This document shows, piece after piece, positions 15,537 through 53,237 of a DNA stretch of 64,000 nt. The stretch is from sequence record PV654397.1; one strand, given 5' to 3'. The notes under the pieces were generated by a model. It had not been told where the DNA came from. It did not search any database and saw only the letters and a list, made by a program, of their open reading frames with translations. The translations under genes were made by a program, and so were the position numbers. Position 1 is the stretch's first letter. Every line of letters starts with the position of its first letter.

Positions 15537-15572
15537 AATCAAATGAATGAACGAATTATATGGAGTCCAAAA

Positions 15573-34801: not shown

Positions 34802-36943
34802 ATGGCAGTTTTTTCCAATTTAGAAGGGACCATGATGCCAACATTCAAGTTGGGTAAACGTGGTGCTTCTATTAATTTTGTAAACGATTCTGTCGCAATC
34901 AAAGACTTTTTAGGCGAAACGTTCCTACCTGTTAAGGTGGGAACTCCTAATGACGATGATTCCGCAGTAAACGTTAGGTATCTTGAAGATAACCCAAATG
35001 CTTTATTTGGCGTACTTCCACCAACAAATGACATTGGTAAAAATAACAACACTTATTTTCAAGTTGATTCTGAGGGTATTGTTGATATCTTTGCAAAAAC
35101 AAATGATGTTTGGGTAAAATCATTATACATTAATAAAAATGTCCTTTCCAGTGTTAACGGTGCTGATTATATCGGACTTATTACTGGAGGAACACTTCAA
35201 CAGGCACAGTTTTACATAACTCCAGAAGAGTTTGGTGCAAAAGGTGATGGCATCACTGATGACACGGCGGCGGTTAACGCATGTGCAGTTTATGCTAAAG
35301 AACACCAAATCCAAATTCAAGCTGGTGGTAATTATCGTATCAGAACTGCTGTTTATTTGAATGATATTCAATGGTTTGGTGGTACAATCACTGGTAACGG
35401 TGGCACAATGGTATCGGTACTGAATAGTACAATCCAACAAGCAACATTAACAGGATGTTATTTAAAATTCTTTGGTGGTAATGGTAAATTTTATTTTAAT
35501 AAATTTATTAATATTACAAGTACTGCTGCATTTCTAATGCAAGGTATGACTGAATCAGGTACTATCGACTTCTGCTTTAATGAAATGACACAATGTAAGT
35601 ACGGTGTTCTTCAGCAAGGCACTGGTGAGAAAATGACCGTTGGGCGTTATTCATACAACCACATCCATGATATATATGGTGATGCAATTGAATTGAACGT
35701 AGTCAACTCACATTACCCAGACGGATTTGTAATAGAAGGTAACTTGATTGAAAACGTAGATGGTACAAATGCACCAATTCCTCTTTCAAACTGGGGTATT
35801 GGTATCGGTGTTGCAGGTTCTGGTCCTTATGATGTGAATGCTGATGATTCACAATATGTAAAAAAATTCGTTATAAAAAATAACCGCTTGTACAATGTCC
35901 GTCAATGTATTCACGTTGAGTTGGGTAAAGACTTTAAAATTCTCAATAATGAAGTTTATCCATCAACGTTGGTATCAATTGGTACTGGTTTGACAACCGC
36001 TGGTGTAATTACTTATGGTTCTGTTGATTTTATTATTGATGGCCTATCTGGGCATCTATTAAATGATCCATCAGTAACTAACCGTATGGTTTCTATTAAC
36101 TGGGGCGTAACATCTGGTAAATTTGCTGGTCCTCCACGAAACTTTAAATTATGTAATCTCCACATTCCTGAGTCGTCTATTATTGTGTATACTTCAGGCT
36201 CTGATAATTGGCTAAATACTACTGAACTTTCTAATATTACATGTAGTAGAATTCAATGGCGTGGATTGCCGTCATCTTCCAAGTTTAATAATATCAGTAC
36301 TAAAGAACTTGATGTTATTGGACAACACCTTGCAACTGAAGGTGAAGGAGGGGGCTTATATACTCGCTCTAAATATACATATACCAACTGGACTAATTGT
36401 GTTGTTCAAGATGATTGTAACATATCAAAATATAGTTTCTCAAGAATGTATGTTGACCGTATTGACCAATCATCTAATAACTTTAAAGTAACCACTGCAA
36501 TTGATGGAACGGGTCATCGTGGACCTGTAGTAATACCTGTAGTTGAACAGTATTACGTGCCTTATGATGTTTTTCCTGGTGGGAGATATTTCCCAGCAGG
36601 AACAATTATCCATAAACAATCAGGTGGAAAATTTATTGTTACAGTAGGTGGTTCTTTCTTTGGTCGATATGACACAATTAGACAAACAGTTGCAGGACAA
36701 ACTTATATCGAAGCATTGGGTGTATCATGGGGTGATAATCAATATGCTAAAGCTGCTGGAACCGAAATCCTAATCACAGGAGCAGGGGAAAATGGCGAAG
36801 ATTTAAAAACATATATCACTAGAGCAGTTTATGTTGTTAATAATGCGTATCGTATCGATATTGCCGATCCGATTGTTACTGCTACCGCAGCAGGGGCATT
36901 ATTAAAAGCTGCTCAACCAATAACATATATCACCCTATCTTAA
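34802..36943 (+). CDS. Tail spike with WcaM-like beta-helix (putative colanic acid depolymerase)
   Basis: PEEFGAKGDGITDDT; YGVLQQG, GDAIELNV, NWGIGIGVAGS, RQCIHVELGKDF, PRNF match the WcaM motif order. Confidence 0.8.
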   Translation: MAVFSNLEGTMMPTFKLGKRGASINFVNDSVAIKDFLGETFLPVKVGTPNDDDSAVNVRYLEDNPNALFGVLPPTNDIGKNNNTYFQVDSEGIVDIFAKTNDVWVKSLYINKNVLSSVNGADYIGLITGGTLQQAQFYITPEEFGAKGDGITDDTAAVNACAVYAKEHQIQIQAGGNYRIRTAVYLNDIQWFGGTITGNGGTMVSVLNSTIQQATLTGCYLKFFGGNGKFYFNKFINITSTAAFLMQGMTESGTIDFCFNEMTQCKYGVLQQGTGEKMTVGRYSYNHIHDIYGDAIELNVVNSHYPDGFVIEGNLIENVDGTNAPIPLSNWGIGIGVAGSGPYDVNADDSQYVKKFVIKNNRLYNVRQCIHVELGKDFKILNNEVYPSTLVSIGTGLTTAGVITYGSVDFIIDGLSGHLLNDPSVTNRMVSINWGVTSGKFAGPPRNFKLCNLHIPESSIIVYTSGSDNWLNTTELSNITCSRIQWRGLPSSSKFNNISTKELDVIGQHLATEGEGGGLYTRSKYTYTNWTNCVVQDDCNISKYSFSRMYVDRIDQSSNNFKVTTAIDGTGHRGPVVIPVVEQYYVPYDVFPGGRYFPAGTIIHKQSGGKFIVTVGGSFFGRYDTIRQTVAGQTYIEALGVSWGDNQYAKAAGTEILITGAGENGEDLKTYITRAVYVVNNAYRIDIADPIVTATAAGALLKAAQPITYITLS

Positions 36944-37865: not shown

Positions 37866-37898
37866 TCCAGACTATGATTCATCGAGTCTGGATTTTTT
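37866..37898 (+). terminator. Intrinsic terminator
   Basis: TCCAGACT ... AGTCTGGA followed by TTTTTT. Confidence 0.75.
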
Positions 37899-37906
37899 AT
37901 ATCAAC

Positions 37907-37930
37907 AACTAAATATATGTATATTAACAA
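37907..37930 (+). promoter_or_regulatory. Late promoter element shared by both giant fibre genes
   Basis: AACTAAATATATGTATATTAACAA; 23/24 identical to 42989-43012. Confidence 0.65.
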
Positions 37931-37974
37931 GGTCAAATGTATTTTATGCTTTTTGCCTATTTGGAGGGAACTAA

Positions 37975-40900
37975 ATGTACTCGATTAAAACAGATCTCGA
38001 TATAACTGGTGGTGCAACGGTTGGTAAAGATCTTCTTGTGAAAGGCGATGCAGTATTCAATAAAAATCTAACAGTTAATGGAACTGTAACTTTTGCTGAC
38101 GCTGTATTCACTGCAATTGAAGCAGGAACTGTAGACATTTCATCTACACTAGATGTTGCTGGTAAAGCATCATTGAATGGTGGAATTGAAGTTCATGGTA
38201 ATTCCGTAATTGGTAATTTGCCTGTTGGTTCTGATACTGCAACAATTAATTCTAATGCACAATTCCAAAGCCCAGTATCAATGGCAGGTAACCTAACACA
38301 AACCGCTGGCACTGCTGTACTAAAAGATACCCAAGTGGCATCAATGGATGTTCTTGGAACTTCTTCATTTAAAGGTAACATTACTGCTGAAACTGGCACT
38401 ACCGCAGCATTTGACAAAATAACTGCAACTGATGCAACATTCACAAACACTGCAACTACTGATATTACATCAACTGGAACTGCAAACTTTAAAGATGTGA
38501 ATATTTCCGGTACACTAGGTGGAACATTTAGTCTATCTGATGTTAATGCAACAACTCTAACTGTTTCTGGTTTAACCAGTCTACAAGGTGGTGTTACATT
38601 AGGTTCCAACATTACTGGTGTGAATAGTAGTGCAAACTTCCGTGATATTAAAATTGGTTCCAATGCTGCAAACACTAACTACCGTTTGAGCTTTAACTAT
38701 TCTGCTCCAAGTCTTCGTCCAACTGTAATTCTACAGAACGAAATCCAATCAGAATTGATGTCTCCAGCTACCCTAAGTGTATTGAAAACTGCATCTTTTG
38801 GTGATTCGTCATTATCCACTTTTGGTATTACTGGTAATGGTCTAAACAAACTAGATTACCTAACAGTATCTGGTAACTCTGTTCAAGATCCAACAACTCC
38901 ACTATTACAAGTAACTTCAGGTAAAACTAAAGTTCATGATTTCGAAGTAACAGGAACTGCAACTATTCCTAACATTGAAAGTACTGGTACTGCTAATTTT
39001 AATAACATCAACGTATCTGGTACACTCGGTGGTACTTTCAGTCTTGATGATATTGAAGCAAACACACTAACTGTATCCGGTTTAACTAGCCTTGTTGGTG
39101 GTGTAACTTTAGGTGCTGATATTTCCGGTGCTAATAGTACTGCTAATTTTAAAGCAGTAAGTTTAGGACAAAACGCCGCCGATGCTAACGTTAAGTATGG
39201 TTTTGCTTATTCTGCCCCTGGTGCTCGTCCAACTGTAATTCTACAAAATGAAATTCAGTCTGAGCTAGTATCTCCAGCAGTACTTAATGTACAAAAAACT
39301 GCAACCTTTGGTGATGCATCTCTTGCAACCTATGGTATCACAGGTAACGGTCTAAACAAACTAGATTATCTATCTATTACTGGTAATGGTACACAAAGTC
39401 CAGCTACACCACAACTACAAGTTGCTGGTAAATCAGTACTAAATGATGTTGAATTCACTGGTACTGTAACTGGTCTAACTGTTGATGTGAGTGGACAAGA
39501 TCTAACTCCTAAATCAGTAGATGCTGCTGAAGCAATCAAAGGTCAAACCCTTGAATCAGTTGGTCAAACCACAGTAGGAACTAACCTACAAGTTGGTGGA
39601 ACTGCTAATGTTGTTGGTGCACTAACTGGTACTGCTGCTACCTTCACTGGTGATGTAAGTGCTGCTAAAGGTACTTTCAGTGGTGATGTTAGCGTTACTG
39701 GTCAAACTGTAACTGTACGTGATTTAGTAGTAACTGGTACAACTACTGGTGTAACTGCTCAAGCTGATGTTGATGGTCTTGATATCGCCCCAAATAAAGT
39801 TGATGTTACAACAACACTATCTGTTGCTGGGGACACTACTTTAGCTGGCCTAACTGCTAGTTCAGTAACCAGTACTGGTGATGTTACTGGTGCGTCTGTA
39901 TCTGGTAATACAGTAACTGCGGCTGGTGCACTATCTGGTGGTTCTCTTGCAGTAACTGGTGCTGGTTCTATGGCTTCACTAACTGTTCCAAGTATTACTG
40001 GTGACACTACTTTTGCTAATAACGTAACTATTACTGGAACACTAACTCCGAGTAGTATAGATTTAAGCACTACTGATGTAAGTGCTGCTTCTTTAACAAC
40101 TACTGGTAACGTAACTGTTGGTGGTTCTCTTGCAGTAACTGGTGCTATTGATTTGTCTGCTGCTGATGTAGTAACAAAATCAGTTAGTGCAACTAACCCA
40201 AGTACATTTGGTGTAATTAATGCATCTTCTGTTGCCGCAACTGGTGACGTTTCAGGTGGCACACTAACTACTACTGGTGCAGCGAAAGTAGGAACACTAA
40301 CTAGTACTGGTGTAGTATCTGGTTCGCGTTTGTCTTCTGGTACTGCAACAATCACAACTTCTGTAACAGTTCCGACTTTACAAGCTGAAGCTGCTGGTGC
40401 TGGTACACTAAATCTAGCAAGTAATGTTGTCGCGGCAAAAGATCTAACTGTCACTGGTGTATTCAAACCTGAAGGTGGTCTTGATCTAACAACTGTTGAT
40501 ATTACTGCAAACTCACTAACTACTACTGCTGATGTTAATGTTGGTGGAAACTTAGTAGTTGATGGTACTTTTGACCTAAGTGCTGCTGATGTGTCTGTGA
40601 AATCTCTTGCAAGTGCAGAGACAATTACAAGTGCTGGTGTTATTACCGTTACCGATTCAACCAATACTAGTTCGTTACCTAAAATTACTTCAACTGATGC
40701 AACACTCTTTACAGTAAATGCAGGTACTATTAATGCAACTGGCAACAGTGTACTACAAAGTGTATCAGCTACTCAAGTAACTGCTACTAGTGCTGAATTT
40801 TCTGGTGGTGGCCTTGGTCTTCAAGTTGATAATGATGCAAACGTTGGTGGTGCATTATCTGTTGGTGGCATTGCAACTGTTGGTTCTTTAACAACAACTG

Positions 40901-42909
40901 CTGCTTCTCTTAATATTGCAAAAAATACTGCAATCACTGGTGATTTAGCTGTATCTGGTACACTAACTGCTGGTTCAATCGACCTAAGCAATACTGATGT
41001 AACCGTTAAATCTCTTGATTCACTAGGTAACGCACACATTGCTGGTAACCTAACTGTTGATGGTGCATTCGACTTAAGTGCAACTAACCTTGTAGCTGCA
41101 AGTCTAGCAAGTACTGGTTCTACTACTGTTGGAACTGATCTAGTACTAACAACTGGTGTTGTGACTGGTAGCCCAGCTATCTCTGGTAATACAACAATCG
41201 GTGGAACTCTTGGTGTAACTGGTGCTGTTAACCTAACTGATATTGTTAATATCGGTAAGAAAGTAACAGTGAGTACTGGTGGTATTCAGGTAGTTGATGG
41301 TGGTATCAATACTAACACAATTAACGTTTCTGGTGCTTCTACTCTAGCAGGAACTTCCATTACTGGAACTTTAGGTGTAACTGGTGCTTCTACTCTAGCA
41401 GGTGTATCTGCGACATCACTAACAGTTTCTGGTGACAGTACTGTTCAGAAACTAACTGTCCAAGGTGAATTGATCCCACAAGGTGGTCTTGACCTAAGCG
41501 GTGCAGACATTACTGCTAATAGTCTAACTACTGCAACAACTATCAATGCAACTGGCCTAAGTACTCTAAGTGGTGGTGTTAGTACTTCTACTGTGACTGC
41601 ATCTGGTCTAGCAACTGTTGGAAGTTTAACTTCTACTGCAAACGCATCAGTTGGTGGTAATTTGGGTGTAACTGGAACTCTAGATGTTACTGGTGCTACT
41701 ACTGTATCTTCACTAACAGCTACTGGTGCAGTGAAAACTGGCACAACCCTAACTGTTGGTACTCCAGTTGGTGAACAACCTGAAACTGTACAGATCATTC
41801 CAGATACTTATATTGCTGGTAAATTGCGTGTAATCGGCGGTATTAACGCTGAAATCGACGTAAGTGGTCAAACACTAGAACCATATGCAATTGAAGCTGC
41901 TGCAACACTATCTGCTGTTGGTAACATTACTTCTGGTGCAACCATCGTTTCTAAAGCTGCAACAATTGGTGATGTTGGTTCACAAAACAACAACCTAACT
42001 GTTAATGGTAACGTAGTAACTAATGGTGACTTCACCGTTACTGGTGTACTAAATGCACAATTGAACCAAGCAGATTCCGATGTAGCTGTTAAATCTTTAA
42101 CTGCAACTAATAACGTTGTGGCTGGTACTTCAATCACTGCTGGTACTTCCATCACTGCAACTGGATTACTAAAAGGTAATTCGTTAGAAGTCACCACTAC
42201 TGGTTCATTTGGTGGTGCAGTAACTATGTCAAGTGGTGCAAACATCACTGGTACTGTTGGTATCACTGCTGGTGACCTAACAGTAGGTGGTAATATCTCT
42301 GCAACTGGGACTGCTGGATTCGGTGCAACAACCGTTTCTACAATTACAACATCAGGTTTAGCTACACTTGCAAGTGCATCTGTAACTGGTGCTCTAACTG
42401 TAGGTGGTACATTAACTGCAAATGGTAACACTGTGATTGGTGATGCTGCTGCTGATACTTTAACTGTAAATGCAACATCTACATTTAAAGAGAACGCAAC
42501 ATTTGATAAGAACCTAACAGTGACTGGTTCTATTAACACCACCACTGCAAACTTCACTACAAACAACATGGTAACTAAGAAATATTCTGTTATCCCTGCT
42601 AGTGTTACTGCTTCTACTGCTGCTGTAGGTGGTACTTGGACACCAGATGGTACTACTAACGTATATCGCTTAACTCTTGACCAAAGTGTTACAATGGATT
42701 CCATCGCGGGTCTAATTGGTAGTGGTCAAGCATGTTCAGTGTATATCTATGTAACTCCATCTGTTGCTGATACTACTTTCACCTTCGGTGGTGCATACTC
42801 TGTAGTTTCTGGTACAGTAAGTGCTGTAGTTGGTCAAACAAGTATTATCCAAGTAATCTATGATGGTTTCAGTACTGTGTTTGATACCTTCGTTGCACAA
42901 CGTGTATAA
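37975..42909 (+). CDS. Giant repetitive fibre protein A (1644 aa)
   Basis: T/G/V/S/A-rich short beta repeats; two copies of a GITGNGLNKLDY domain; followed by its paralog and a DUF4376-like chaperone. Confidence 0.7.
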   Translation: MYSIKTDLDITGGATVGKDLLVKGDAVFNKNLTVNGTVTFADAVFTAIEAGTVDISSTLDVAGKASLNGGIEVHGNSVIGNLPVGSDTATINSNAQFQSPVSMAGNLTQTAGTAVLKDTQVASMDVLGTSSFKGNITAETGTTAAFDKITATDATFTNTATTDITSTGTANFKDVNISGTLGGTFSLSDVNATTLTVSGLTSLQGGVTLGSNITGVNSSANFRDIKIGSNAANTNYRLSFNYSAPSLRPTVILQNEIQSELMSPATLSVLKTASFGDSSLSTFGITGNGLNKLDYLTVSGNSVQDPTTPLLQVTSGKTKVHDFEVTGTATIPNIESTGTANFNNINVSGTLGGTFSLDDIEANTLTVSGLTSLVGGVTLGADISGANSTANFKAVSLGQNAADANVKYGFAYSAPGARPTVILQNEIQSELVSPAVLNVQKTATFGDASLATYGITGNGLNKLDYLSITGNGTQSPATPQLQVAGKSVLNDVEFTGTVTGLTVDVSGQDLTPKSVDAAEAIKGQTLESVGQTTVGTNLQVGGTANVVGALTGTAATFTGDVSAAKGTFSGDVSVTGQTVTVRDLVVTGTTTGVTAQADVDGLDIAPNKVDVTTTLSVAGDTTLAGLTASSVTSTGDVTGASVSGNTVTAAGALSGGSLAVTGAGSMASLTVPSITGDTTFANNVTITGTLTPSSIDLSTTDVSAASLTTTGNVTVGGSLAVTGAIDLSAADVVTKSVSATNPSTFGVINASSVAATGDVSGGTLTTTGAAKVGTLTSTGVVSGSRLSSGTATITTSVTVPTLQAEAAGAGTLNLASNVVAAKDLTVTGVFKPEGGLDLTTVDITANSLTTTADVNVGGNLVVDGTFDLSAADVSVKSLASAETITSAGVITVTDSTNTSSLPKITSTDATLFTVNAGTINATGNSVLQSVSATQVTATSAEFSGGGLGLQVDNDANVGGALSVGGIATVGSLTTTAASLNIAKNTAITGDLAVSGTLTAGSIDLSNTDVTVKSLDSLGNAHIAGNLTVDGAFDLSATNLVAASLASTGSTTVGTDLVLTTGVVTGSPAISGNTTIGGTLGVTGAVNLTDIVNIGKKVTVSTGGIQVVDGGINTNTINVSGASTLAGTSITGTLGVTGASTLAGVSATSLTVSGDSTVQKLTVQGELIPQGGLDLSGADITANSLTTATTINATGLSTLSGGVSTSTVTASGLATVGSLTSTANASVGGNLGVTGTLDVTGATTVSSLTATGAVKTGTTLTVGTPVGEQPETVQIIPDTYIAGKLRVIGGINAEIDVSGQTLEPYAIEAAATLSAVGNITSGATIVSKAATIGDVGSQNNNLTVNGNVVTNGDFTVTGVLNAQLNQADSDVAVKSLTATNNVVAGTSITAGTSITATGLLKGNSLEVTTTGSFGGAVTMSSGANITGTVGITAGDLTVGGNISATGTAGFGATTVSTITTSGLATLASASVTGALTVGGTLTANGNTVIGDAAADTLTVNATSTFKENATFDKNLTVTGSINTTTANFTTNNMVTKKYSVIPASVTASTAAVGGTWTPDGTTNVYRLTLDQSVTMDSIAGLIGSGQACSVYIYVTPSVADTTFTFGGAYSVVSGTVSAVVGQTSIIQVIYDGFSTVFDTFVAQRV

Positions 42910-42927
42910 CATTTTAAATTAATAATT

Positions 42928-42958
42928 AAAGCCAACTAAAATAGTTGGCTTTTTCTTT
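42928..42958 (+). terminator. Intrinsic terminator
   Basis: AAAGCCAACTA-AAA-TAGTTGGCTTT then TCTTTT. Confidence 0.8.
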
Positions 42959-42988
42959 TGTATTAGATAATAGTGTTTTTGTGAATTA

Positions 42989-43012
42989 AACTAAATATAA
43001 GTATATTAACAA
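42989..43012 (+). promoter_or_regulatory. Late promoter element (second copy)
   Basis: AACTAAATATAAGTATATTAACAA. Confidence 0.65.
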
Positions 43013-43058
43013 AAGATGGGTTATGAATATATAGTTCATCGTTATAGGAGGGGACTCT

Positions 43059-46000
43059 ATGTACTCGATTAAAACGGATCTTGATGTATCTGGTAATTCC
43101 ACGGTAGGTAAGGATCTTTTGGTCAAAGGTAATGCAGTATTCAGTAATGACCTAACGGTTAATGGGGAAGTGTCTTTTGCTAACGCAGTATTCACTGCAA
43201 TTACCGCTGGTTCTGTGAATGTCACAGGTGCATTGGATGTTGCTGGTAAGGCAACCTTATCCGGTGGTGCTGATGTTTCAGGTGCTGCGACATTTGCAGG
43301 AAACATTACTGCTGCTGACGGCACAACTGCAAAATTTGATAACTTAGAAGCTAATTCAGGATCATTTAATTCTGTTGAATCAACTGATATTACTTCAACT
43401 GGCACAGCAACTTTTAAAGATGTAAACATTTCTGGTACACTTGGTGGTACTTTTAATCTTTCTGATATTAATGCTACAACACTTAATGTGTCTGGTGCTT
43501 CAGCACTAACTGGTTCAGTCACATTGGGTGCAAATATCACTGGTCTTGCAAGTACTGCAAACTTCCGTGATATTCGTATCGGGCCTAATGAAGCAGGTCA
43601 AGCATATAGACTAAACTTTGGTTACACCGTTCCAGGACAACGACCAACCGTTCTTCTACAGAACGAAGTTCAATCCGAACTAATGTCACCAGCTAAGTTG
43701 AATGTTCTACAAACTGCAACATTTGGTGATTCTTCACTTTCAACTTACGGTATTACAGGTAATGGTTTAAACAAATTAGATTATGTAACTATTTCTGGTA
43801 ACGCAATTCAATCACCAACCACTCCTTTACTTGAAGTAACTAAAGGTAAAACTAAAGTTGTTGATTTAGAAGTAACTGGTGTAGCAACTATTCCTAATAT
43901 CGAAAGTTCTGGTACTGCAAACTTTAACAACATCAACGTATCTGGTACTATTGGTGGTAGTTTTGATTTAGATGATATCCAAGCAACAACATTATCAGTA
44001 TCCGGTGCTTCAGCACTAACTGGTGCAGTTACATTGGGTGCAAACATCACTGGTCTAGCAAGTACTGCAACATTCAAAGCAATCAATTTGGGTCAAAATA
44101 CCGCTGATGCTAACGTTAAGCTAGGTTTTGCATATACTGCACCTAGTGCACGTCCAACAGTCTTGTTAGCAAACGAAGTTCAATCTGAACTAATGTCTCC
44201 TGCTAAGTTGAACGTTCTACAAACTGCAACCTTCGGTTCTGCTGCACTATCTACCTATGGTATTACTGGTAATGGTCTAAACAAATTAGATTATCTAACA
44301 ATTACTGGTAACGCAACACAAAACCCTGCTACTCCACAACTTCAAGTTGGTGGTAAAGCAATTCTTAATGATGTTGAATTTACAGGTACTGTAACTGGCC
44401 TAACTGTTGATGTGAGTGGACAAGATCTAACTCCTAAATCAGTAGTTGCTGCTGAAGTAATCAAAGGCCAAACTCTTGAATCAGTTGGTCAAACAACTGT
44501 AGGTTCATCTCTACAAGTTGGTGGTGCTGCAACTGTTACTGGTGCATTATCTGCTGCCTCTGGTACTTTCAGTGGTGATGTTAGTGGTTCTAAAGGTATC
44601 TTCAGTGATAGCGTATCCGGTACAAGTGCAACCTTTACTGGGGATGTTAGCGGTGATAACGCAACCTTTAGTGGCGATTTATCTGCTGTAGCTGGCACTT
44701 TCAGTGGTGATGTAACCGTAACTGGTCAAACAATCACGGTTAAAGACTTGGTAGTAACTGGAACTTCAACTGGTGTAACTGCAATCGCTGACGTTGACGG
44801 TCTTGATATTGCTCCAAACAAAGTTGATGTTACAACAACTCTATCTGTTGCTGGTGAATCAACTCTTGCTGGTGTTACAGCAACTTCAATCAATAGTACT
44901 GGTGCAATTGCAGGTACTGCAATTTCTGGCTCTACTATTACAGCAACTGGTGAAATTTCTGGTGCATCATCTGTAGTAACTGGTCTTTCTAAATCTGGTA
45001 GCGTTGAAACTGGTGCTCTAAAGGCATCTTCTGTTGAAACTGCAATCATTAGCAACACTGCTGGTGTGTCAATAACAAACAACACTTCAATTGCAGGTAA
45101 TCTATCTGTAACTGGAACTGTTACCCCTGGTGCAATTGACCTAAGTACTACTGATATTGATGCTAAGTCTCTAACAACTACTGAAGGTGCTAACATTGGT
45201 GGTGACCTAGTTGTTGCAGGTACAGTTGATCTAAGTGCTGCTGACGTTGCTGTTAAATCTCTAACCAGTACTGGTGCAGTTATTAGTTCTGAAGGTACAG
45301 TAAGTAGTGTTCTACCTAAACTTTCCAGTACTGAAGCTAATATTACCACAGTGACTGCAACCACTGCAAATGCAACCACACTAAATGTAACTGGTACATC
45401 AACTCTAGCTGGTGTTAACGCTTCTGGTGCTATTACTTCTGCAACTAACATTACCGCTACTGGTGTATTAAAAGGTGCATCTGTTGAAACTGCGTCAATC
45501 AGCAATGCTGATGGTGTAGCAATTAACAATAACACTACAATCACTGGTAATTTGGACGTATCTGGGACATTGACCCCTGGTGCAATTGACCTAAGTACTA
45601 CTGATATTAGTTCTAAGTCTCTAACCACAACTGAAGGTGCTACAATTGGTGGCGATCTTGTGGTAGCAGGTACTGTTGACCTAAGTGCTGCTGATGTGTC
45701 TGTGAAATCTCTTGCAAGTGCAGAGACAATTACAAGTGCTGGTGTTATTACAGTTTCGGATACAGTGAATTCTAGCACTCTACCAAAACTAATTACTACT
45801 GATGCAACTATTGGTGCTGTCCATGCAGCTACTATTGAAACAACTGGTTCAAGTACACTAAAACAAGTATCTGCTACTGAAGTAACAGCTACAAGTATTG
45901 TACTAAATTCAGTTGGTGAAGGTTTACGTGTTGACAATAATGCAAACATTAATGGTATATTAAGTGTTAATAATATTACTTCTACCAATGATACTATTGC

Positions 46001-48779
46001 AATTGCGAAAAGTGCTGCTATTACTGGTGATCTGACCGTATCTGGGACATTGACCCCTGGTGCAATTGACCTAAGTACTACCGATATTAGTTCTAAATCC
46101 CTAAGTACTACTGAAGGTGCTACAATTGGTGGTGACCTAGTTGTTAATGGTTCAATTGATTTAAGTTCTTCCAATGTTTCAGCAATTACCCTTGCTAGTT
46201 CTGGTAATACTACCGTTGGTGGTAACCTAGTACTAACAACTGGTGTTGTAACTGGCAGCCCATCTGTATCTGGTAACCTTTCAGTTGCAGGTACTGCGGC
46301 AGTAACTGGTGCAACTACCCTAACTGATATCGTAAATATCGGTAAGAAAGTAACTGTAAGCACTGGTGGTATTCAAGTAGTTGCAGGTGGTATTAATACC
46401 GACGCTATATTAGTATCCGGTGATACAACTTTAAACAACACTACTGTAAACACTACCTTAAATGTAACTGGTCAAAGTACAGTAGCTGCACTAAGTGCTG
46501 CATCTTTGAATGTATCTGGTGATAGTACTGTTCAAAAACTAACAGTTGAAGGTGAATTGGTTCCACAAGGTGGTATCGACCTAACTGGTGCAGATATTTC
46601 TGCTAATAGTCTTGCAACTGCTTCAACAATCACTGCAACTGGACTAAGCACACTAAGTGGTGGTGTAAGTACTACTAATGTTACTGCATCTGGTACAGTG
46701 AATGCTGGTAGTTTGGATGTTACTAACAACGCAACCGTTGGTGGTAATTTGGGTGTAACTGGTTCATTAACTTCTGGACCATTGAGTGTAACAGGTATTG
46801 CGAATATTACTGGTGTAACAACTGTTGGTTCATTGGTTTCCGGTGCTGTATCTGGTAGTACTGGTACATTTAGTTCAACATTAGGTGTAACTGGTGCAGC
46901 TACATTTGACAATGACGTAACTGTTGAAGGTGTATTCACCCCAGCAGGTGGTTTAGACCTAACAACTTCTGATATTACAGCTAAGAGTTTGTCAGTATCT
47001 GAAACTATTCACTCTGATGGTGCAGCTTCCTTTGGTGGTAACACAACAGTAGGTGGTACATTGGGTGTAACTGGTGCAGTAACTGCTCCATCGGCAACCC
47101 TAAGCGGTACTGGTACTGCACTAGCAGTAACTAATAATGCAACTATTGGTGGTACATTGGGTGTAACTGGTCAAGCATCACTTGGTTCTATAGTAACTTC
47201 TGGTGTATCTGCAACAAGTGGCTCTTTCAGTACTACTCTTGGCGTTACTGGTGCTGCGACATTTGGAAACGATGTAACTGTAGTTGGAACACTAACTCCT
47301 GGTAGCTTAGATCTAACTGGTGCAGATATCTCTGCTAAAACACTAACTCTATCTGAAACATTAAATGCGACAGGTAATACTACCCTTGGTGGAACATTAG
47401 GTGTAACTGGTTTAGCAACAATTGGTGGAACACTAACGTCTGGTGCAGTAACTGCTCCATCTGCAACCTTGAATGGTTCAGGAACTGGTCTAGCAGTAAC
47501 TAACAACGCAACCGTTGGTGGTACATTAGGTGTAGTTGGTCAAACAACACTAGGTTCTGTTAAAACTGGTGCAACTCTAACAGTTGGTACACCATTAGGT
47601 GAGCAGCCTGAAACTGTACAGATTATGCCAGACACTTATATTGCTGGTAAACTACGTGTTGAGGGTGGTATTAACGCAGATATCGATGTTGGTGGACAAA
47701 CACTAGAACCGTTTGCAGTAATAGCATCTGATTCTTTATCTTCTGCTGGTAATATTACTGCTGGTGCAGCAATTATTTCAAGTTCTGCAACAATTGGTGA
47801 AGTCGGTTCACAAAACAACAACCTAATCGTTAATGGTAACGTTGTAAACAACGGTAACTTCACTGTTACTGGCGTACTAAATGCACAATTGAACCAAGCA
47901 GATTCCGATGTAGCTGTTAAGTCTTTGACTGCAACTAACAACGTAGCTGCTGGAACCACATTAAGTGCAGGTACTGCAATTACTGCTGGTACTTCCATCA
48001 CTGCAACTGGATTACTTAAAGGTAATACTTTAGAAGTTACTACTACTGGTTCATTTGGTGGTGCAGTAACTATGTCAAGTGGTGCAAACATCACTGGTAC
48101 AGTAGGTATTACTGCTGGTAACCTAACAGTGGGTGGTGATATCTCTGCAACTGGCACTGCTGGATTCGGTGCAACAACCGTTTCTACAATTACAACATCA
48201 GGTTTGGCTACACTTGCAAGTACATCCGTTACTGGTAACGCAACAGTAGGTGGAACACTAGCAGTAACAGGAGCACTAACTGCGAATGGTAACGTAACAT
48301 TAGGTGACGCAGCGGCTGACGTTCTAACCGTTAATGCAACTTCATCATTTAAAGAAAATGCTGTGTTTGATAAGGCAGTAACAGTAACTGGTGAACTAAC
48401 CACTACTAATGCTAACTTAACTACTACAACAGTAACTACCAAAAAGTATGATGTAATCCCAACTCAAGTTACATCATCAGTAATTGCTCCAACCGGAACA
48501 TGGACTCCAGATGGTACAAGTAACGTGTACTTCATCACTCTAGACCAAGATACCACGTTGGCTCCAATTACTGGCCTAATTGGTGGCGGTAAAGCTGCAT
48601 CAGTATACATCTATGTTAAACAAGATACAACTGGTAACAGAAACTTTACAACTGATGGTACTTATGCTGTTGTTGATGGTGAACTAAACAAAACTGCTGG
48701 TAGCGTGACCATTTACCAAGTAATTTATGATGGTGTAAGTCCAGTTACTGATTTGTTCATTGCACAACGTACTGCTTAA
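43059..48779 (+). CDS. Giant repetitive fibre protein B (1906 aa), paralog of fibre A
   Basis: Same N-terminus MYSIKTDLD, same duplicated domain, same C-terminal TWTPDGT.NVY..TLDQ domain, extra internal modules. Confidence 0.7.
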   Translation: MYSIKTDLDVSGNSTVGKDLLVKGNAVFSNDLTVNGEVSFANAVFTAITAGSVNVTGALDVAGKATLSGGADVSGAATFAGNITAADGTTAKFDNLEANSGSFNSVESTDITSTGTATFKDVNISGTLGGTFNLSDINATTLNVSGASALTGSVTLGANITGLASTANFRDIRIGPNEAGQAYRLNFGYTVPGQRPTVLLQNEVQSELMSPAKLNVLQTATFGDSSLSTYGITGNGLNKLDYVTISGNAIQSPTTPLLEVTKGKTKVVDLEVTGVATIPNIESSGTANFNNINVSGTIGGSFDLDDIQATTLSVSGASALTGAVTLGANITGLASTATFKAINLGQNTADANVKLGFAYTAPSARPTVLLANEVQSELMSPAKLNVLQTATFGSAALSTYGITGNGLNKLDYLTITGNATQNPATPQLQVGGKAILNDVEFTGTVTGLTVDVSGQDLTPKSVVAAEVIKGQTLESVGQTTVGSSLQVGGAATVTGALSAASGTFSGDVSGSKGIFSDSVSGTSATFTGDVSGDNATFSGDLSAVAGTFSGDVTVTGQTITVKDLVVTGTSTGVTAIADVDGLDIAPNKVDVTTTLSVAGESTLAGVTATSINSTGAIAGTAISGSTITATGEISGASSVVTGLSKSGSVETGALKASSVETAIISNTAGVSITNNTSIAGNLSVTGTVTPGAIDLSTTDIDAKSLTTTEGANIGGDLVVAGTVDLSAADVAVKSLTSTGAVISSEGTVSSVLPKLSSTEANITTVTATTANATTLNVTGTSTLAGVNASGAITSATNITATGVLKGASVETASISNADGVAINNNTTITGNLDVSGTLTPGAIDLSTTDISSKSLTTTEGATIGGDLVVAGTVDLSAADVSVKSLASAETITSAGVITVSDTVNSSTLPKLITTDATIGAVHAATIETTGSSTLKQVSATEVTATSIVLNSVGEGLRVDNNANINGILSVNNITSTNDTIAIAKSAAITGDLTVSGTLTPGAIDLSTTDISSKSLSTTEGATIGGDLVVNGSIDLSSSNVSAITLASSGNTTVGGNLVLTTGVVTGSPSVSGNLSVAGTAAVTGATTLTDIVNIGKKVTVSTGGIQVVAGGINTDAILVSGDTTLNNTTVNTTLNVTGQSTVAALSAASLNVSGDSTVQKLTVEGELVPQGGIDLTGADISANSLATASTITATGLSTLSGGVSTTNVTASGTVNAGSLDVTNNATVGGNLGVTGSLTSGPLSVTGIANITGVTTVGSLVSGAVSGSTGTFSSTLGVTGAATFDNDVTVEGVFTPAGGLDLTTSDITAKSLSVSETIHSDGAASFGGNTTVGGTLGVTGAVTAPSATLSGTGTALAVTNNATIGGTLGVTGQASLGSIVTSGVSATSGSFSTTLGVTGAATFGNDVTVVGTLTPGSLDLTGADISAKTLTLSETLNATGNTTLGGTLGVTGLATIGGTLTSGAVTAPSATLNGSGTGLAVTNNATVGGTLGVVGQTTLGSVKTGATLTVGTPLGEQPETVQIMPDTYIAGKLRVEGGINADIDVGGQTLEPFAVIASDSLSSAGNITAGAAIISSSATIGEVGSQNNNLIVNGNVVNNGNFTVTGVLNAQLNQADSDVAVKSLTATNNVAAGTTLSAGTAITAGTSITATGLLKGNTLEVTTTGSFGGAVTMSSGANITGTVGITAGNLTVGGDISATGTAGFGATTVSTITTSGLATLASTSVTGNATVGGTLAVTGALTANGNVTLGDAAADVLTVNATSSFKENAVFDKAVTVTGELTTTNANLTTTTVTTKKYDVIPTQVTSSVIAPTGTWTPDGTSNVYFITLDQDTTLAPITGLIGGGKAASVYIYVKQDTTGNRNFTTDGTYAVVDGELNKTAGSVTIYQVIYDGVSPVTDLFIAQRTA
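45121..46150 (+). repeat. Three internal modules in fibre B spaced 450 and 480 bp
   Basis: ACCCCTGGTGCAATTGACCTAAGTACTAC recurs near 45123, 45573 and 46053; 45-bp exact repeat at 45557-45601 and 46037-46081. Confidence 0.85.
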
Positions 48780-48845
48780 TAATTATAATAAAAAAAACGG
48801 TGTCATCAATTATGGTGACACCATCTTAACAAGTGAGGTAGTTAT

Positions 48846-49625
48846 ATGTTTACATATGTAAAAGGTAGTTCTAAAGAAAATTATGAATTGGGTAACATCA
48901 TCTCCAACCCAGTTGGTGTTAAGGGTTTAAAAGAACGCCCTGGGGCAACTCCAGATGATGAACAAACATATCGTTATTTGTACAGTGATATTCGTGCACT
49001 TTATGGTATTTCAAGTAAAGATGGTTCTGAAATTGAACCTAATAACGCTGTTCGCAAAGAAGAGGGTTTCTGGTGGTTGGAATATAAGAATGTTGGTAAT
49101 GTGAACGCAATTAATGAGAATTTGGAATATATTAAACTACAAGATAGTAATCAACCAGTCATCACATTCTTAGAAGAAGCAGAAGGTGAATATAAAGAGT
49201 TAACAGTACTGAAAACTTATAATTATGTTGATATGGACATTGCAGCAGTTAAATCTGATCTGAAAGCACGCACAGTATCATCTCGTAGTGATCGTATTAA
49301 TGCTGGTTATATGTTTAACGGTCATCGTTATAGTACTGATCTAGCTGGTCGTCAAATGCTTCTTAATTATTATACACAAGTAACTTCCGGTTCTGATAGC
49401 GTTTCGATTTTCCTTGATGACGCAATTGTAAAACTATCTGCTGCTGAAATGACTCAACTATACACTGAAGCATTTGCTATGGTTGAATCCCTATTTGCAG
49501 AGTGTAATAAGCAATGTGCTGACATTGATGCAGTTCCTGATGCTGATGAAGATGCAATTTATAAAGCACAACAGGCGGCTGTATGGGTATATGAAGGTAT
49601 TGATATTCCTGAGCGTACTCGTTAA
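48846..49625 (+). CDS. Tail fibre assembly chaperone-like protein (DUF4376-like C-terminus)
   Basis: RSDRINAGYMFNGHRYSTDLAGRQML and downstream helices; directly after the fibres. Confidence 0.6.
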   Translation: MFTYVKGSSKENYELGNIISNPVGVKGLKERPGATPDDEQTYRYLYSDIRALYGISSKDGSEIEPNNAVRKEEGFWWLEYKNVGNVNAINENLEYIKLQDSNQPVITFLEEAEGEYKELTVLKTYNYVDMDIAAVKSDLKARTVSSRSDRINAGYMFNGHRYSTDLAGRQMLLNYYTQVTSGSDSVSIFLDDAIVKLSAAEMTQLYTEAFAMVESLFAECNKQCADIDAVPDADEDAIYKAQQAAVWVYEGIDIPERTR

Positions 49626-51714: not shown

Positions 51715-52644
51715 TTATACAGCCATTGGTGCTTTGATTGTTGGCATTGGATCGTAATTAACTAATTTGAAAGAATCCATAGTGAAATCTTCAATATCAG
51801 TAATAGTAGGATCTAGCCATAATTCTGGTAATGTACGTGGTTCACGTTGGAGTTGCTCTTTTACTTGTTCAATATGGTTTTGATAGATATGGCAGTCGCC
51901 ACCATTCCAAATAAATTCACCAACATCTAACCCTGTAATTTGTGCAATCATATGAGTTAGTAGTGAGTAACTACTAATATTAAATGGTACACCAAGGAAT
52001 AGATCAGCACTACGTTGATGAAGAATACAACTTAGTTTACCCTGTACAACACAAAACTGCACAAAGCTATGACAGGGTGGCAAAGTCATAGCATCAAGCT
52101 CACCAACGTTCCATGCACTTAGAATGTGACGACGACCGTATGGATCAGTATTGATACCTTCAATAACTTGTTTTAGCTGGTCAGTTACACGACGCATAAT
52201 AACACCATGTGAACCAGTATAATCAATAACTTTATACCCTTTATCTTTTAGTTCTTGAATTTCTTCAGTACTGGAACTGAATTTATAATCTTCCCATTCA
52301 CGCCATTGTTTACCATAAACTGGGCCAAGCTCACCATCAGAATACCCAAGGCTTACACCTTGATTAAGGTAGTTGTCTGTCCAAATTGTTTTCTTTTCTA
52401 CATCACGTGTCCCGTGTAAAATTTCACACAGACGACGCTCATCGTGAGAACCTTCAATAAACCATAACAATTCTGAAGTCATTGCTTTCCAAGCCAAACG
52501 TTTAGTAGTTACTGCTGGGAAACCTTCTTTTAGGTCAAAACGCATTTGTTGTCCGATTAGCTTGATAGTGCCAACACCAGTACGATCAACGCTTTCGACA
52601 CCTTGATCCAGAATTCTTTGATATAGTTCTTGTAGTTGTTTCAT
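51715..52644 (-). CDS. thyA: Thymidylate synthase
   Basis: DRTGVGT, FPAVTTK, LGPVYGKQWR, RRHILSAWN, LPPCH, QRSADLFLGVPFN, GDCHIY; no intron. Confidence 0.97.
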   Translation of the reverse strand: MKQLQELYQRILDQGVESVDRTGVGTIKLIGQQMRFDLKEGFPAVTTKRLAWKAMTSELLWFIEGSHDERRLCEILHGTRDVEKKTIWTDNYLNQGVSLGYSDGELGPVYGKQWREWEDYKFSSSTEEIQELKDKGYKVIDYTGSHGVIMRRVTDQLKQVIEGINTDPYGRRHILSAWNVGELDAMTLPPCHSFVQFCVVQGKLSCILHQRSADLFLGVPFNISSYSLLTHMIAQITGLDVGEFIWNGGDCHIYQNHIEQVKEQLQREPRTLPELWLDPTITDIEDFTMDSFKLVNYDPMPTIKAPMAV

Positions 52645-53237
52645 TTTACGTCCTTGAAAAATGTAATAAAGTGTTCCATGTGTTTTTGTGTAGCATTACG
52701 TGAACCAATCCCAGTCCAGTTACCGTGTGGTGCTGGTATTGAGAATGTTTCAGTAAACTCTTTCAGTACTGTATCATAATAAAATACAGAGCGAGTGTTC
52801 ATATCATAACAATATATTTCTGGATTGTCAACTGAATCCATATACATCTGTACGGCCCATGCAGTTCCACCTGAAACTTGCGTAGGTGATGTAATATTTG
52901 CAATACAATATACTCTTTTTGTATTAAGTATCTGATAACTATTCCTTGCAAGTAAGTTATATACATACGAACCAGGCTTAGGAACTTTACGGCGTAAAGA
53001 GTAACATGCAATGTTTAATTGTTTTAATATTGAACTATCACAAAGGATATTGGGTGGAATTTCTAATATAGTATTTTCATCTACGCTGCTTTGGTGACCC
53101 TTGAATGAAAAATTTATTACTTCAAATCCATTGTCTTTTGCATAGATAGAAAAAAGGCGGTCAGCACCTGCTGCCCCGCCACTGAAACATACATTAGATA
53201 AACCATTGATTGCTTCATCTAATTCTATTTTATTCAT
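52641..53237 (-). CDS. SLOG (SMF/DprA-LOG/YpsA)-fold protein, putative nucleotide-binding
   Basis: VCFSGGAAGAD, LLARN, SGGTAWAV motifs; ATGA overlap with thyA. Confidence 0.55.
   Translation of the reverse strand: MNKIELDEAINGLSNVCFSGGAAGADRLFSIYAKDNGFEVINFSFKGHQSSVDENTILEIPPNILCDSSILKQLNIACYSLRRKVPKPGSYVYNLLARNSYQILNTKRVYCIANITSPTQVSGGTAWAVQMYMDSVDNPEIYCYDMNTRSVFYYDTVLKEFTETFSIPAPHGNWTGIGSRNATQKHMEHFITFFKDVK

What the first reader, a model, noticed from the sequence alone, without database searches (positions are those of the whole stretch)
37975..48779. Two giant paralogous fibres with patches of exact DNA identity: signs of ongoing gene conversion or module shuffling
The genes differ at many synonymous sites yet share exact tracts: 76 bp (40571-40646 = 45676-45751), 59 bp (42196-42254 = 48042-48100), 50 bp (42310-42359 = 48156-48205), 47 bp (42046-42092 = 47874-47920) and 46 bp (39475-39520 = 44400-44445). 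Each gene has its own terminator/promoter/SD cassette. Recombination between tracts would generate chimeric fibres of different length, a diversification route that needs no reverse transcriptase or invertase. They may be the hair-like appendages reported on related jumbo phages (inference).
Basis: partly seen in the sequence, partly recalled or inferred. Interest (0 to 1): 0.7.

Follow-up and report, generated by a model that had tools for sequence, protein, structure and literature searches.

The report
Paralogous phage fibre genes exchanging segments
Two neighbouring giant fibre genes of an E. coli jumbo phage repeatedly copy stretches of DNA into one another and, in one relative, appear fused into a single hybrid gene; this is a familiar kind of recombination, here seen as differences between closely related isolates.

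Summary
All five exact tracts (76, 59, 50, 47 and 46 nt) are exact and maximal, plus a sixth of 35 nt. The window is Escherichia phage WPEC5, a 121Q-like jumbo phage. Gene A (37975-42909, 1644 aa) and gene B (43059-48779, 1906 aa) are collinear tandem paralogues: 68% aa identity, pS 0.47. The tracts are far longer than chance allows (P=0.0002 for the longest; five of 40 nt or more in 0 of 5000 shuffles). They lie in troughs of synonymous divergence that are specific to the A/B pair and absent against phage 121Q. Across eight near-identical isolates B hardly varies over 47982-48238. A 42136-42392 is B-like in five isolates (85-93%) and divergent in three (61-68%, with an 18-nt deletion). A second lineage (JNE01, Turkey5) has its own tracts elsewhere. 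Phage TH47 carries one A-head/B-tail fusion gene whose junction lies inside the homogenised segment. So recurrent gene conversion and unequal crossing-over are well supported. Assigning the genes to the virion "hairs", and any adaptive value, remain untested. The process is a known kind; I found no report of this instance.

The parts
37866..37898 (+). Terminator-like hairpin (8-bp stem, 11-nt loop) plus T6 run, downstream of the 299-aa virion protein gene
   Evidence: Read directly from the sequence. The consensus scan did not list it because the loop exceeds 8 nt.
37909..37929 (+). AT-rich 21-nt motif upstream of gene A; candidate promoter element (inference)
   Evidence: The motif occurs only twice in the 64-kb window, once upstream of each gene; 0.02 matches expected by chance. 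It is conserved at both positions in all nine two-copy relatives and occurs once in TH47.
37963..37968 (+). Shine-Dalgarno GGAGGG of gene A
37975..42909 (+). Gene A, 1644-aa fibre protein (T/G/A/V/S-rich, beta-helix-like shaft, A-type C-terminal tip)
   Evidence: ORF; PHROG 4549 tail fiber, E=9e-182; composition.
38474..39493 (+). Two 510-nt (170-aa) shaft modules in A
   Evidence: Repeat families D1, D4 and D6. JP4 has exactly one extra 170-aa unit and JNE01 B' has three units.
39475..39520 (+). 46-nt exact tract (= 44400-44445), inside the dS trough A 39394-39573
   Evidence: Absent in BF17, whose A has 8 differences across 39480-39558.
40571..40646 (+). 76-nt exact tract (= 45676-45751), inside the dS trough A 40537-40656
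   Evidence: Its length varies by strain: 76, 71, 50 or 47 nt.
40100..40540 (+). A-specific mid-shaft module; groups by orthology, with no sign of conversion
   Evidence: pN(A,B) is 0.5-0.67; A is close to JNE01 A' (nt p 0.15-0.23) and B is close to 121Q.
42046..42092 (+). 47-nt exact tract (= 47874-47920)
   Evidence: It extends to 74-80 nt in fEgEco12, Ecwhy_1, BF17 and Turkey3.
42121..42158 (+). 18-nt tandem repeat (2.1 copies) next to an 18-nt length difference between A and B and next to the TH47 junction
42136..42392 (+). Polymorphic conversion segment of A (partner B 47982-48238); holds the 35-, 59- and 50-nt exact tracts
   Evidence: A-B identity is 0.93 in WPEC5 and 0.85-0.91 in four other strains, but 0.61-0.68 in WPEC3, BF17 and Turkey3, which also carry an 18-nt deletion. 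B hardly varies here.
42394..42906 (+). A-type C-terminal tip region (171 aa)
   Evidence: At least 99.4% identical in nine two-copy strains, 72% in JNE01 and Turkey5, and 60% to the 121Q/B-type tip. It groups by orthology.
42928..42961 (+). Intrinsic-terminator-like hairpin (11 pairs, 3-nt loop) plus T-run between A and B
42991..43011 (+). Second copy of the AT-rich 21-nt motif, upstream of gene B
43046..43053 (+). Shine-Dalgarno AGGAGGGG of gene B
43059..48779 (+). Gene B, 1906-aa fibre protein; orthologue of the single 121Q-type gene in its mid-shaft module and tip
   Evidence: ORF; PHROG 4549, E=1.5e-203; PDB 9cuy_g (phiTE putative tail fibre), E=1.4e-30; pN(B,121Q) is 0.01-0.08 in the tip.
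43399..44418 (+). Two 510-nt shaft modules in B
44519..44723 (+). 33-nt (11-aa) repeats; more copies in B than in A (A 39594-39699)
   Evidence: Family D7; B-only gaps of 22 and 11 codons.
45009..46221 (+). Three 450/480-nt shaft modules in B
   Evidence: Family D5
46836..47541 (+). 236-codon stretch present in B and absent in A, with 369-nt internal repeats (47071-47567); the main cause of the length difference
   Evidence: D16
47982..48238 (+). Donor-side partner of the polymorphic conversion segment
48522..48776 (+). Confidently predicted terminal beta domain of B (last ~85 aa)
   Evidence: AF2 pLDDT 77-94. It matches many predicted phage tail-fibre C-terminal domains in BFVD and no solved structure.
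48799..48822 (+). 7-bp hairpin after B without a clear T-run
   Evidence: Read directly

Best explanation
Genes A and B are tandem paralogues that encode two long fibre proteins of a 121Q-like jumbo coliphage. They share the same N-terminal start and modular beta-helix-like shaft, but have different mid-shaft modules and different C-terminal tips. The duplication is old: divergence is saturated (pS about 0.5) and the pair is shared with the JNE01/Turkey5 lineage. Because the copies lie in direct orientation 5 kb apart in a recombination-proficient genome, they keep recombining. Non-reciprocal homologous exchange (gene conversion), often in short patches, overwrites parts of one copy with the other; the clearest case is B copied into A over A 42136-42392. 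This creates the exact-identity tracts. Reciprocal unequal crossing-over inside such homogenised stretches deletes the interval between them and leaves one A-head/B-tail fusion gene, as in TH47. Exchange with co-infecting relatives adds foreign shaft alleles on top. Shown here: the tracts, their statistical excess, A/B-specific low dS, polymorphism between strains, lineage-specific tracts, and the fusion gene in a public record. Inferred: the direction of transfer, the molecular pathway (heteroduplex and patchy repair), that the tips bind receptors and are kept distinct by selection, and where the fibres sit on the virion.
For: Tracts are exact and maximal. The permutation with the amino-acid pattern held fixed gives P(longest >= 76) = 0.0002, and five tracts of 40 nt or more occurred in 0 of 5000 shuffles. 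Sliding pS falls to 0.14-0.31 at A 39454-39573 and 41968-42387, against a background of 0.5-0.65. In the same windows pS(A,121Q) and pS(B,121Q) stay at 0.45-0.73, so these sites are not slow in general. Only A 42136-42392 differs in A-B identity between strains: 0.93, 0.91, 0.90, 0.89 and 0.85 against 0.68, 0.61 and 0.61; every other segment is constant. WPEC5 and WPEC3 differ at 3 sites in 3 kb of flank but at 85 sites in A. Of those, 52 lie within 100 nt, and at nearly all of them WPEC5 carries the B state. WPEC5 and fEgEco12 differ at 24 sites in A; 9 lie within 100 nt (0.49 expected, corrected P about 1e-7), and at all 9 one strain carries the B state. The divergent A haplotype has no closer relative than 71% outside BF17, Turkey3 and WPEC3. 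In the quartet with JNE01, the copies group by genome at A 39454-39573 and 42031-42426 for WPEC5. JNE01's A'/B' are nearly identical elsewhere (p = 0.03 at A 38854-38973, with an 89-nt exact tract). The copies group by orthology in the mid-shaft and the tips. TH47's flanks are 99% identical to the window. It has one 1652-aa gene that matches A at the diagnostic sites up to 42135 and B from 42171 (579 of 600 sites fit a single switch).
Against: There are no read-level data. TH47 is an UNVERIFIED record, so its fusion could be an assembly collapse. Polarity (B into A) rests on B hardly varying and on no outside donor being found, not on an outgroup: this segment is very variable in every lineage. 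Within the converted segment A and B still differ at 7-15% of sites, so the main event is not very recent, or was patchy, or used a different B allele. Its distribution among strains does not follow the flank tree, so recombination between phages has also moved these haplotypes around. Nothing here shows that the exchanges change function.
Confidence: 0.85

Rival explanations
1. There is no recombination. The identity tracts are stretches under strong purifying selection at the protein and codon or nucleotide level, such as slow sites, codon bias or an embedded signal.
For: The tracts coincide with low pN (0.01-0.06) as well as low pS, and the proteins have a biased composition.
Against: A permutation that preserves the amino-acid pattern and codon usage rejects it. 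The same codons are saturated against 121Q and JP4, with pS 0.45-0.73. In JNE01 the same regions are 30-60% divergent between A' and B'. Three isolates carry a 35%-divergent A sequence in the main tract region and still have an intact ORF.
Confidence: 0.03
2. It is an assembly or polishing artefact. Short reads from one paralogue were mapped to the other, creating false identity patches, and TH47's single gene is a collapsed repeat.
For: TH47, CMSTMSU and Ecwhy_1 are flagged UNVERIFIED. CMSTMSU has 4 and 10 frame-shifting indels in its two copies, which shows poor base quality. The five-site B-like patch at 42144-42165 is B-like at all five sites only in WPEC5.
Against: The large B-like segment has the same boundaries in five records from different laboratories and countries, and the divergent form appears in three others. 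JNE01 and Turkey5 show tracts at different places. Exact repeats of 35-80 nt are shorter than typical reads (my knowledge). TH47 shows a single clean switch with intact reading frame and alleles that match known strains on both sides.
Confidence: 0.07
3. The patterns come from recombination between different co-infecting phages (allele import at the same locus), not from exchange between A and B within one genome. Under this view the divergent A segment of BF17, Turkey3 and WPEC3 was imported.
For: Import clearly happens. Ec-M-J's B equals WPEC5's B at both ends (p <= 0.03) but is 20-55% divergent over the central ~4.3 kb. Turkey3's A carries a foreign allele over 41292-41811. TH47's A part is BF17-like over 38875-39774. 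The converted haplotype does not follow the flank tree.
Against: Import does not explain why A equals the B of the same genome in segments bounded by saturated divergence, nor why JNE01's A' and B' are identical in other segments. No outside donor of the divergent haplotype exists in 50,697 phage records. The micro-patches between near-identical strains always involve the paralogue's state.
Confidence: 0.12

Closest known systems
[quoted passage not shown]
   Same: They occupy the same locus between the 299-aa and 259-aa virion protein genes, upstream of thymidylate synthase. They share the B-type mid-module and tip. Mass spectrometry detected them in virions (PMC7247149; PMC5259590).
   Different: There is one gene instead of two. 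By the flanks, the two-copy JNE01 lineage is the outgroup, so the single copy may be derived, and the 121Q gene is itself a mosaic of A-like and B-like parts. The label 'T4 gp34-like proximal subunit' has no support here: no T4 chain was found in the PDB search at E <= 1.
Pectobacterium phage phiTE putative tail fibre protein (PDB 9CUY/9MJN chain g, 793 aa)
   Same: Sequence homology at E=1.4e-30 over the shaft (B aa 335-723) and the C-terminal region (B aa 1690-1903). The fold of the terminal domain also matches the BFVD model K9L5R6. The paper describes the long fibre as a trimer with an extended beta-helix (PMC11972413).
   Different: The homology starts at phiTE residue 213, so the N-terminal baseplate anchor is not shared. 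phiTE's protein is less than half as long. Which phiTE fibre chain g represents is my inference.
Mosaic evolution of tail-fibre genes by homologous recombination at conserved segments (P2/Mu/P1/T-even fibre genes; T-even gp37/gp38 adhesin swapping); from my own knowledge, not retrieved here
   Same: Short conserved stretches inside fibre genes act as crossover points, and the distal parts are exchanged while the frame is preserved.
   Different: Those cases are exchanges between different phages. Here the main partner is a paralogue 5 kb away in the same genome, which gives concerted evolution and a deletion-fusion product.
Interlocus gene conversion and concerted evolution of tandem or dispersed paralogues (for example bacterial tufA/tufB and rRNA operons); general knowledge
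   Same: Local dS troughs, grouping by genome rather than by orthology, patchy short tracts, and unequal crossover that changes copy number.
   Different: Here it occurs in a virus structural gene pair, with the tips apparently protected from homogenisation.
Programmed fibre diversification: diversity-generating retroelements and invertible G/C segments (Mu Gin, P1 Cin)
   Same: The target is a phage fibre gene, and the outcome is alternative distal sequences.
   Different: The two genes are in direct orientation. No reverse transcriptase or invertase is annotated within 12 kb on either side. The differences are not confined to a small variable region.

Membership tests
Phage fibre protein family PHROG 4549 / 121Q gp571 type | Significant profile match over most of the protein | tested here: met
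   A scores E=9e-182 and B E=1.5e-203, with 8 matched stretches each.
Phage fibre protein family PHROG 4549 / 121Q gp571 type | Homology to a fibre seen in a solved virion structure | tested here: met
   9cuy_g from the phiTE baseplate, E=1.4e-30. The shaft and C-terminal region match; the N-terminal anchor does not.
Phage fibre protein family PHROG 4549 / 121Q gp571 type | Distal C-terminal domain with a tail-fibre tip fold | tested here: met
   The last ~85 aa have pLDDT 77-94. There are 75 BFVD matches at E<=0.001, mostly tail-fibre C-termini, and no PDB match.
Phage fibre protein family PHROG 4549 / 121Q gp571 type | Trimeric beta-helical shaft | tested here: inconclusive
   The monomer model of the shaft is low-confidence (pLDDT 53-64). 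Bactofilin (beta-helix) matches are below threshold (E=0.001-0.003). Some homologues pass the Bactofilin threshold.
Phage fibre protein family PHROG 4549 / 121Q gp571 type | Presence in the virion | not testable with these tools
   Known only for orthologues: phAPEC6 gp256 and CBB_226 by mass spectrometry.
Interlocus gene conversion between tandem paralogues | Identity tracts longer than expected from divergence and codon usage | tested here: met
Interlocus gene conversion between tandem paralogues | Synonymous divergence locally reduced between the paralogues but not against orthologues | tested here: met
Interlocus gene conversion between tandem paralogues | Phylogenetic incongruence: copies group by genome in the tracts and by orthology elsewhere | tested here: met
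   Quartet of WPEC5 A/B and JNE01 A'/B'
Interlocus gene conversion between tandem paralogues | Tract present or absent among close relatives, with the donor copy essentially unchanged | tested here: met
Interlocus gene conversion between tandem paralogues | Direct observation of hybrid molecules within one population | not testable with these tools
   No reads are available. TH47 is a public assembly only.
T4 gp34-type long tail fibre proximal subunit (label used in several records) | Detectable sequence similarity to T4 gp34 | tested here: not met
   The PDB sequence search at E<=1 returned only phiTE and two chance hits. There was no Pfam family.
Colanic-acid-degrading tailspike (label on gene A in the WPEC5 record) | Match to the colanidase family | tested here: not met
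   PHROG 6117 matches the upstream 713-aa protein (34802-36943), not A or B.
Invertase- or DGR-driven fibre switching | Inverted repeats or inverted gene segments, or a reverse transcriptase with template and variable repeats | tested here: not met
   The copies are in direct orientation. No invertase or reverse transcriptase is among the 27 annotated neighbours. I did not run a dedicated reverse-transcriptase search.
Sheath/capsid 'hairy' fibres of phAPEC6, CBB and fEgEco12 | Protein located in the hair-like appendages | not testable with these tools
   The authors could not assign genes. Only a length argument is available: phiTE scaling gives roughly 106 and 123 nm, against 119 +/- 10 nm hairs and 28.6 nm baseplate fibres in CBB.

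The most novel reading that the evidence does not exclude
The homogenised stretch just before the tips may work as a standing recombination junction. It would let the two fibre genes trade or lose tips and change copy number. The single-gene Asteriusviruses (121Q, PBECO4, phAPEC6, JP4) would then descend from such A::B fusions of an ancestral pair, and the two products would be the unassigned hair-like fibres on the sheath and capsid of these jumbo phages.
Probability: 0.2. Interest if true: 0.65.

Novelty: new member of a known kind. Interest (0 to 1): 0.5.

Why it matters
It gives a clean, well-sampled natural example of how a large virus remodels its host-contact fibres using nothing but ordinary homologous recombination between duplicated genes. 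The example shows patches of conversion, a fusion product, module copy-number changes and imported shaft alleles, all visible among isolates that are otherwise 97-99.9% identical. Practically, it warns that these two genes cannot be treated as independent markers or assembled safely from short reads. It also shows that the database labels are unsupported: 'gp34-like proximal subunit', 'colanic acid-degrading protein', 'FliK' and 'YadA domain'. And it singles out two long virion proteins as the obvious candidates to locate when the unexplained 'hairs' of these phages are next imaged.

Tried and rejected
- **Pfam:** scans of both whole proteins and of four pieces gave no family above threshold. 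The family listed for homologues (PF26209) is not in the local Pfam copy.
- **Other paralogues:** tblastn of A and B against the rest of the window found none.
- **IMG/VR:** a scan with the A-type tip found only distant relatives (<=48% identity), so it added no strains for the population analysis.
- **Tip fold:** the fold search against solved structures gave nothing significant.
- **53-aa segment (A 38185-38343):** I first took it as a marker linking 121Q to A. It is also present in JNE01 B', so it is just a deletion in the WPEC5-clade B.
- **Polarity:** trying to polarise the 42136-42392 event with JNE01 A' or 121Q failed, because this segment is 35-58% divergent in all comparisons.
- **'One allele matches the paralogue' count:** this is not informative on its own and I did not use it.
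- **Literature:** searches for conversion between phage fibre paralogues returned nothing relevant, and one search was badly framed and wasted.
- **TH47 mini-patch:** the apparent three-site 'A' patch after TH47's switch is explained by a WPEC3-like B allele, not by a second crossover.
Full report
**Observation**

A sixth tract of 35 nt (42136-42170 = 47982-48016) follows, then 28 and 26 nt. The two ORFs are 37975-42909 (gene A, 1644 aa) and 43059-48779 (gene B, 1906 aa), both on the + strand.

**What the genome and the genes are**

The window is 100% identical to Escherichia phage WPEC5. It is 97-99.6% identical over this region to fEgEco12, EC.P1, CMSTMSU, Ecwhy_1, WPEC3, BF17 and Turkey3, which are 121Q-like (Asteriusvirus) jumbo phages.

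Both proteins match PHROG 4549 'tail fiber' (E=9e-182 and 1.5e-203) and no Pfam family. They are rich in Thr, Gly, Ala, Val and Ser.

The only solved relative is chain g of the phiTE baseplate structure 9CUY, 'putative tail fiber protein', at E=1.4e-30. It aligns to the shaft (B aa 335-723) and to the C-terminal region (B aa 1690-1903), but not to the N-terminal anchor. The phiTE paper describes its long fibre as a trimer with an extended beta-helix of predicted length 512 Å (PMC11972413).

An AlphaFold model of the last 217 residues of B, built with an 18-sequence alignment, gives a confident terminal beta domain of about 85 residues (pLDDT 77-94). The shaft part is low-confidence. The terminal domain matches many predicted phage tail-fibre C-termini and no solved structure.

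The locus sits in the tail module. Upstream are a colanidase-like tailspike gene and a 299-aa virion protein gene. Downstream are genes for 259-aa and 654-aa structural proteins, then thymidylate synthase. The single-copy orthologues phAPEC6 gp256 (180 kDa) and CBB_226 were found in virions by mass spectrometry (PMC7247149; PMC5259590).

**Anatomy**

A and B are collinear. The codon alignment has 1584 aligned codons, 68% aa and 71.6% nt identity, pS 0.47 and pN 0.21. Length differences come from modules:
- a 53-codon stretch missing from B;
- extra 11-aa repeats in B;
- a 236-codon B-only block with 369-nt internal repeats;
- several 6-codon indels.

Both genes contain two 510-nt shaft modules. 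JP4's single gene has exactly one more, and JNE01's B' has three.

Upstream of each gene there is a hairpin with a T-run and a strong SD sequence. There is also a 21-nt AT-rich motif that occurs nowhere else in the window. The motif is conserved at both places in all close relatives. Its role as a promoter is inference.

**Are the tracts more than chance?**

I shuffled synonymous codon pairs within each amino acid, so that the conservation pattern and codon usage were kept. The longest run averaged 33 nt, and P(longest >= 76) was 0.0002. Five runs of 40 nt or more never occurred in 5000 shuffles.

Sliding pS shows troughs at A 39394-39573 (0.21), A 40537-40656 (0.25) and A 41935-42414 (0.14-0.3). 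The background is 0.5-0.65. Against the single-copy orthologues of 121Q and JP4, the same windows have pS 0.45-0.73. The low divergence is therefore a property of the A/B pair and not of the sites.

**Population evidence**

I aligned the A and B copies of the eight close two-copy strains. A-B identity is the same in every strain for every segment except A 42136-42392:

| Strain | A-B identity in A 42136-42392 |
|---|---|
| WPEC5 | 0.93 |
| fEgEco12 | 0.91 |
| EC.P1 | 0.90 |
| CMSTMSU | 0.89 |
| Ecwhy_1 | 0.85 |
| WPEC3 | 0.68 |
| BF17 | 0.61 |
| Turkey3 | 0.61 |

In that segment B hardly varies. A occurs either as a B-like haplotype or as a divergent haplotype with an 18-nt deletion, and the left boundary differs between WPEC3 and BF17/Turkey3.

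The divergent haplotype differs from B at 35% of nt and 41% of aa. It has no closer relative than 71% anywhere else in 50,697 phage records.

WPEC5 and WPEC3 differ at only 3 sites in 3 kb of flank but at 85 sites in A. Of these, 52 lie within 100 nt, and at almost all of them WPEC5 carries the B state.

WPEC5 and fEgEco12 differ at 24 sites in A. Nine lie within 100 nt from 42093 (0.49 expected, corrected P about 1e-7). At all nine one strain carries the B state: fEgEco12 at the first four, WPEC5 at the next five. These are short patches typical of conversion.

The tracts themselves vary by strain. The 59- and 50-nt tracts do not exist in BF17 or Turkey3. The 47-nt tract is 74-80 nt in four strains. 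The 46-nt tract is missing in BF17.

**A second lineage**

JNE01 and Turkey5 also carry a tandem pair (1628 and 2120 aa) at this locus.

In a sliding quartet, the mid-shaft (A 39982-40548 and 40942-41394) and the tips (from 42367) group by orthology. The duplication therefore predates the split of the two lineages.

WPEC5's A and B group together at 39454-39573 and 42031-42426, where JNE01's copies are 30-60% apart. JNE01's copies are nearly identical elsewhere: p = 0.03 at A 38854-38973 and 0.11-0.14 at 38035-38373. JNE01 has an 89-nt exact tract there, which in Turkey5 (98.6% identical to JNE01) is broken into 41 and 31 nt.

Independent tracts in independent lineages are the signature of recurrent conversion.

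**A fusion gene**

TH47 is 99% identical to the window in both flanks. It has a single 1652-aa ORF between the same neighbours.

Its locus aligns to the window up to 42411 and again from 47543. At 600 sites that distinguish A from B, it follows A up to 42135 and B from 42171, and 579 sites fit a single switch. A three-site 'A' patch further on is simply the allele that WPEC3's B carries.

On a conservative reading the junction lies somewhere within the homogenised segment 42136-42392. This is what unequal crossing-over between the tracts predicts: the A tip and most of B, 5.85 kb in all, are lost.

TH47 is an UNVERIFIED record, so an assembly collapse cannot be excluded. I put the chance that the fusion is real at about 0.75-0.8.

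By flank identity, JNE01 is the outgroup to WPEC5 plus 121Q. The 121Q gene is B-like in the mid-module and tip, but closer to A around 40798-41148. The single-copy state of 121Q-type phages may therefore also be derived. This is a weak inference, because the flanks can themselves be mosaic.

**Exchange with other phages also occurs**
- Ec-M-J's A is 99.4% identical to the window's A. Its B equals the window's B only at the two ends and is 20-55% divergent over the central ~4.3 kb.
- Turkey3's A carries a foreign allele over 41292-41811.
- TH47's A part is BF17-like over 38875-39774.

**Mechanism**

The best explanation is ordinary homologous recombination between direct tandem paralogues. Non-reciprocal, often patchy transfer creates the tracts, mainly B into A in front of the tip. 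Crossing-over within the tracts gives fusions. Slippage between internal modules changes shaft length.

The tips and one mid-shaft module resist homogenisation. This suggests, but does not prove, selection for two different distal specificities.

**The 'hairs'**

phAPEC6, CBB and fEgEco12 have unassigned hair-like fibres on the sheath and capsid.

Scaling from phiTE (793 aa for 512 Å) gives about 106 nm for A and 123 nm for B. That is close to CBB's 119 +/- 10 nm hairs, which end in small globules, and far from its 28.6-nm baseplate fibres. This is an inference from length only.

**Comparison and novelty**

Fibre-gene mosaicism by homologous recombination, and concerted evolution of paralogues, are both well known (my knowledge). 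The strain papers I read do not describe conversion or fusion at this locus: fEgEco12, BF17, JP4, phAPEC6 and CBB. Two literature searches found no such report. I file it as a new member of a known kind.

**Broken copies in relatives (counts only)**
- CMSTMSU: 4 frame-shifting indels in A; 10 frame-shifting and 1 in-frame indel in B.
- Ec-M-J: 1 frame-shifting indel in A.
- All other copies are intact.

The polymorphism tables my scripts printed listed every variable column. They therefore incidentally include the gap columns of the CMSTMSU record, which are the places of its indels. I did not use them, do not repeat them here, and have deleted nothing.

Noticed in passing
window 15543-25544 (+): A 3333-aa ORF, preceded by a 1153-aa ORF (12031-15492). 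By size and order they resemble phAPEC6 gp245 (382 kDa, detected in virions) and gp244 (131 kDa baseplate wedge). They share no similarity with A or B.
   Followed up: no
window 34802-36943 (+) and relatives L002, L005, L013: The colanidase-like tailspike gene (PHROG 6117) is annotated as two CDS in Ec-M-J and JNE01, and as a 606-nt remnant in JP4. This neighbouring host-contact gene therefore also varies between strains.
   Followed up: partly
window 37975-48779; public records: Annotation labels for the same two genes disagree and are unsupported. They include 'colanic acid-degrading protein' (WPEC5 gene A), 'flagellar hook-length control protein FliK' (CMSTMSU fragments), 'YadA domain protein' (PBECO4) and 'long tail fiber proximal subunit'.
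   Followed up: partly
window 44726-46363 (-), 39759-40745 (-), 41868-42704 (-), 47636-48442 (-): There are long antisense ORFs (up to 545 aa) inside both fibre genes. They are most likely a by-product of the stop-poor, repetitive codon composition.
   Followed up: no
window 42121-42158: An 18-nt tandem repeat (2.1 copies). At the same place B is 18 nt longer than A, and the repeat lies directly beside TH47's A-to-B switch.
   Followed up: partly
window 48846-49625 (+): The 259-aa protein just downstream of B matches a 'virion structural protein' PHROG and, weakly, two 'tail fiber' PHROGs. It could be a fibre-associated partner.
   Followed up: no
window 52641-53237 (-): A gene for a DprA-like recombination-mediator protein lies 4 kb downstream of the pair. 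It may be relevant to the phage's recombination proficiency.
   Followed up: no
PBECO4 (KC295538.1) and Salmonella phage SD-2_S15 records: These records are linearised inside the fibre gene, with the tip at the record start and, in PBECO4, the N-terminal part near the record end. The gene therefore appears split or truncated in their annotation.
   Followed up: no
L009 (Ecwhy_1) gene B, equivalent to window 48063-48273: Ecwhy_1's B carries a third haplotype in the conversion segment, with many private differences and two in-frame deletions totalling 21 nt. Its source is unknown.
   Followed up: partly
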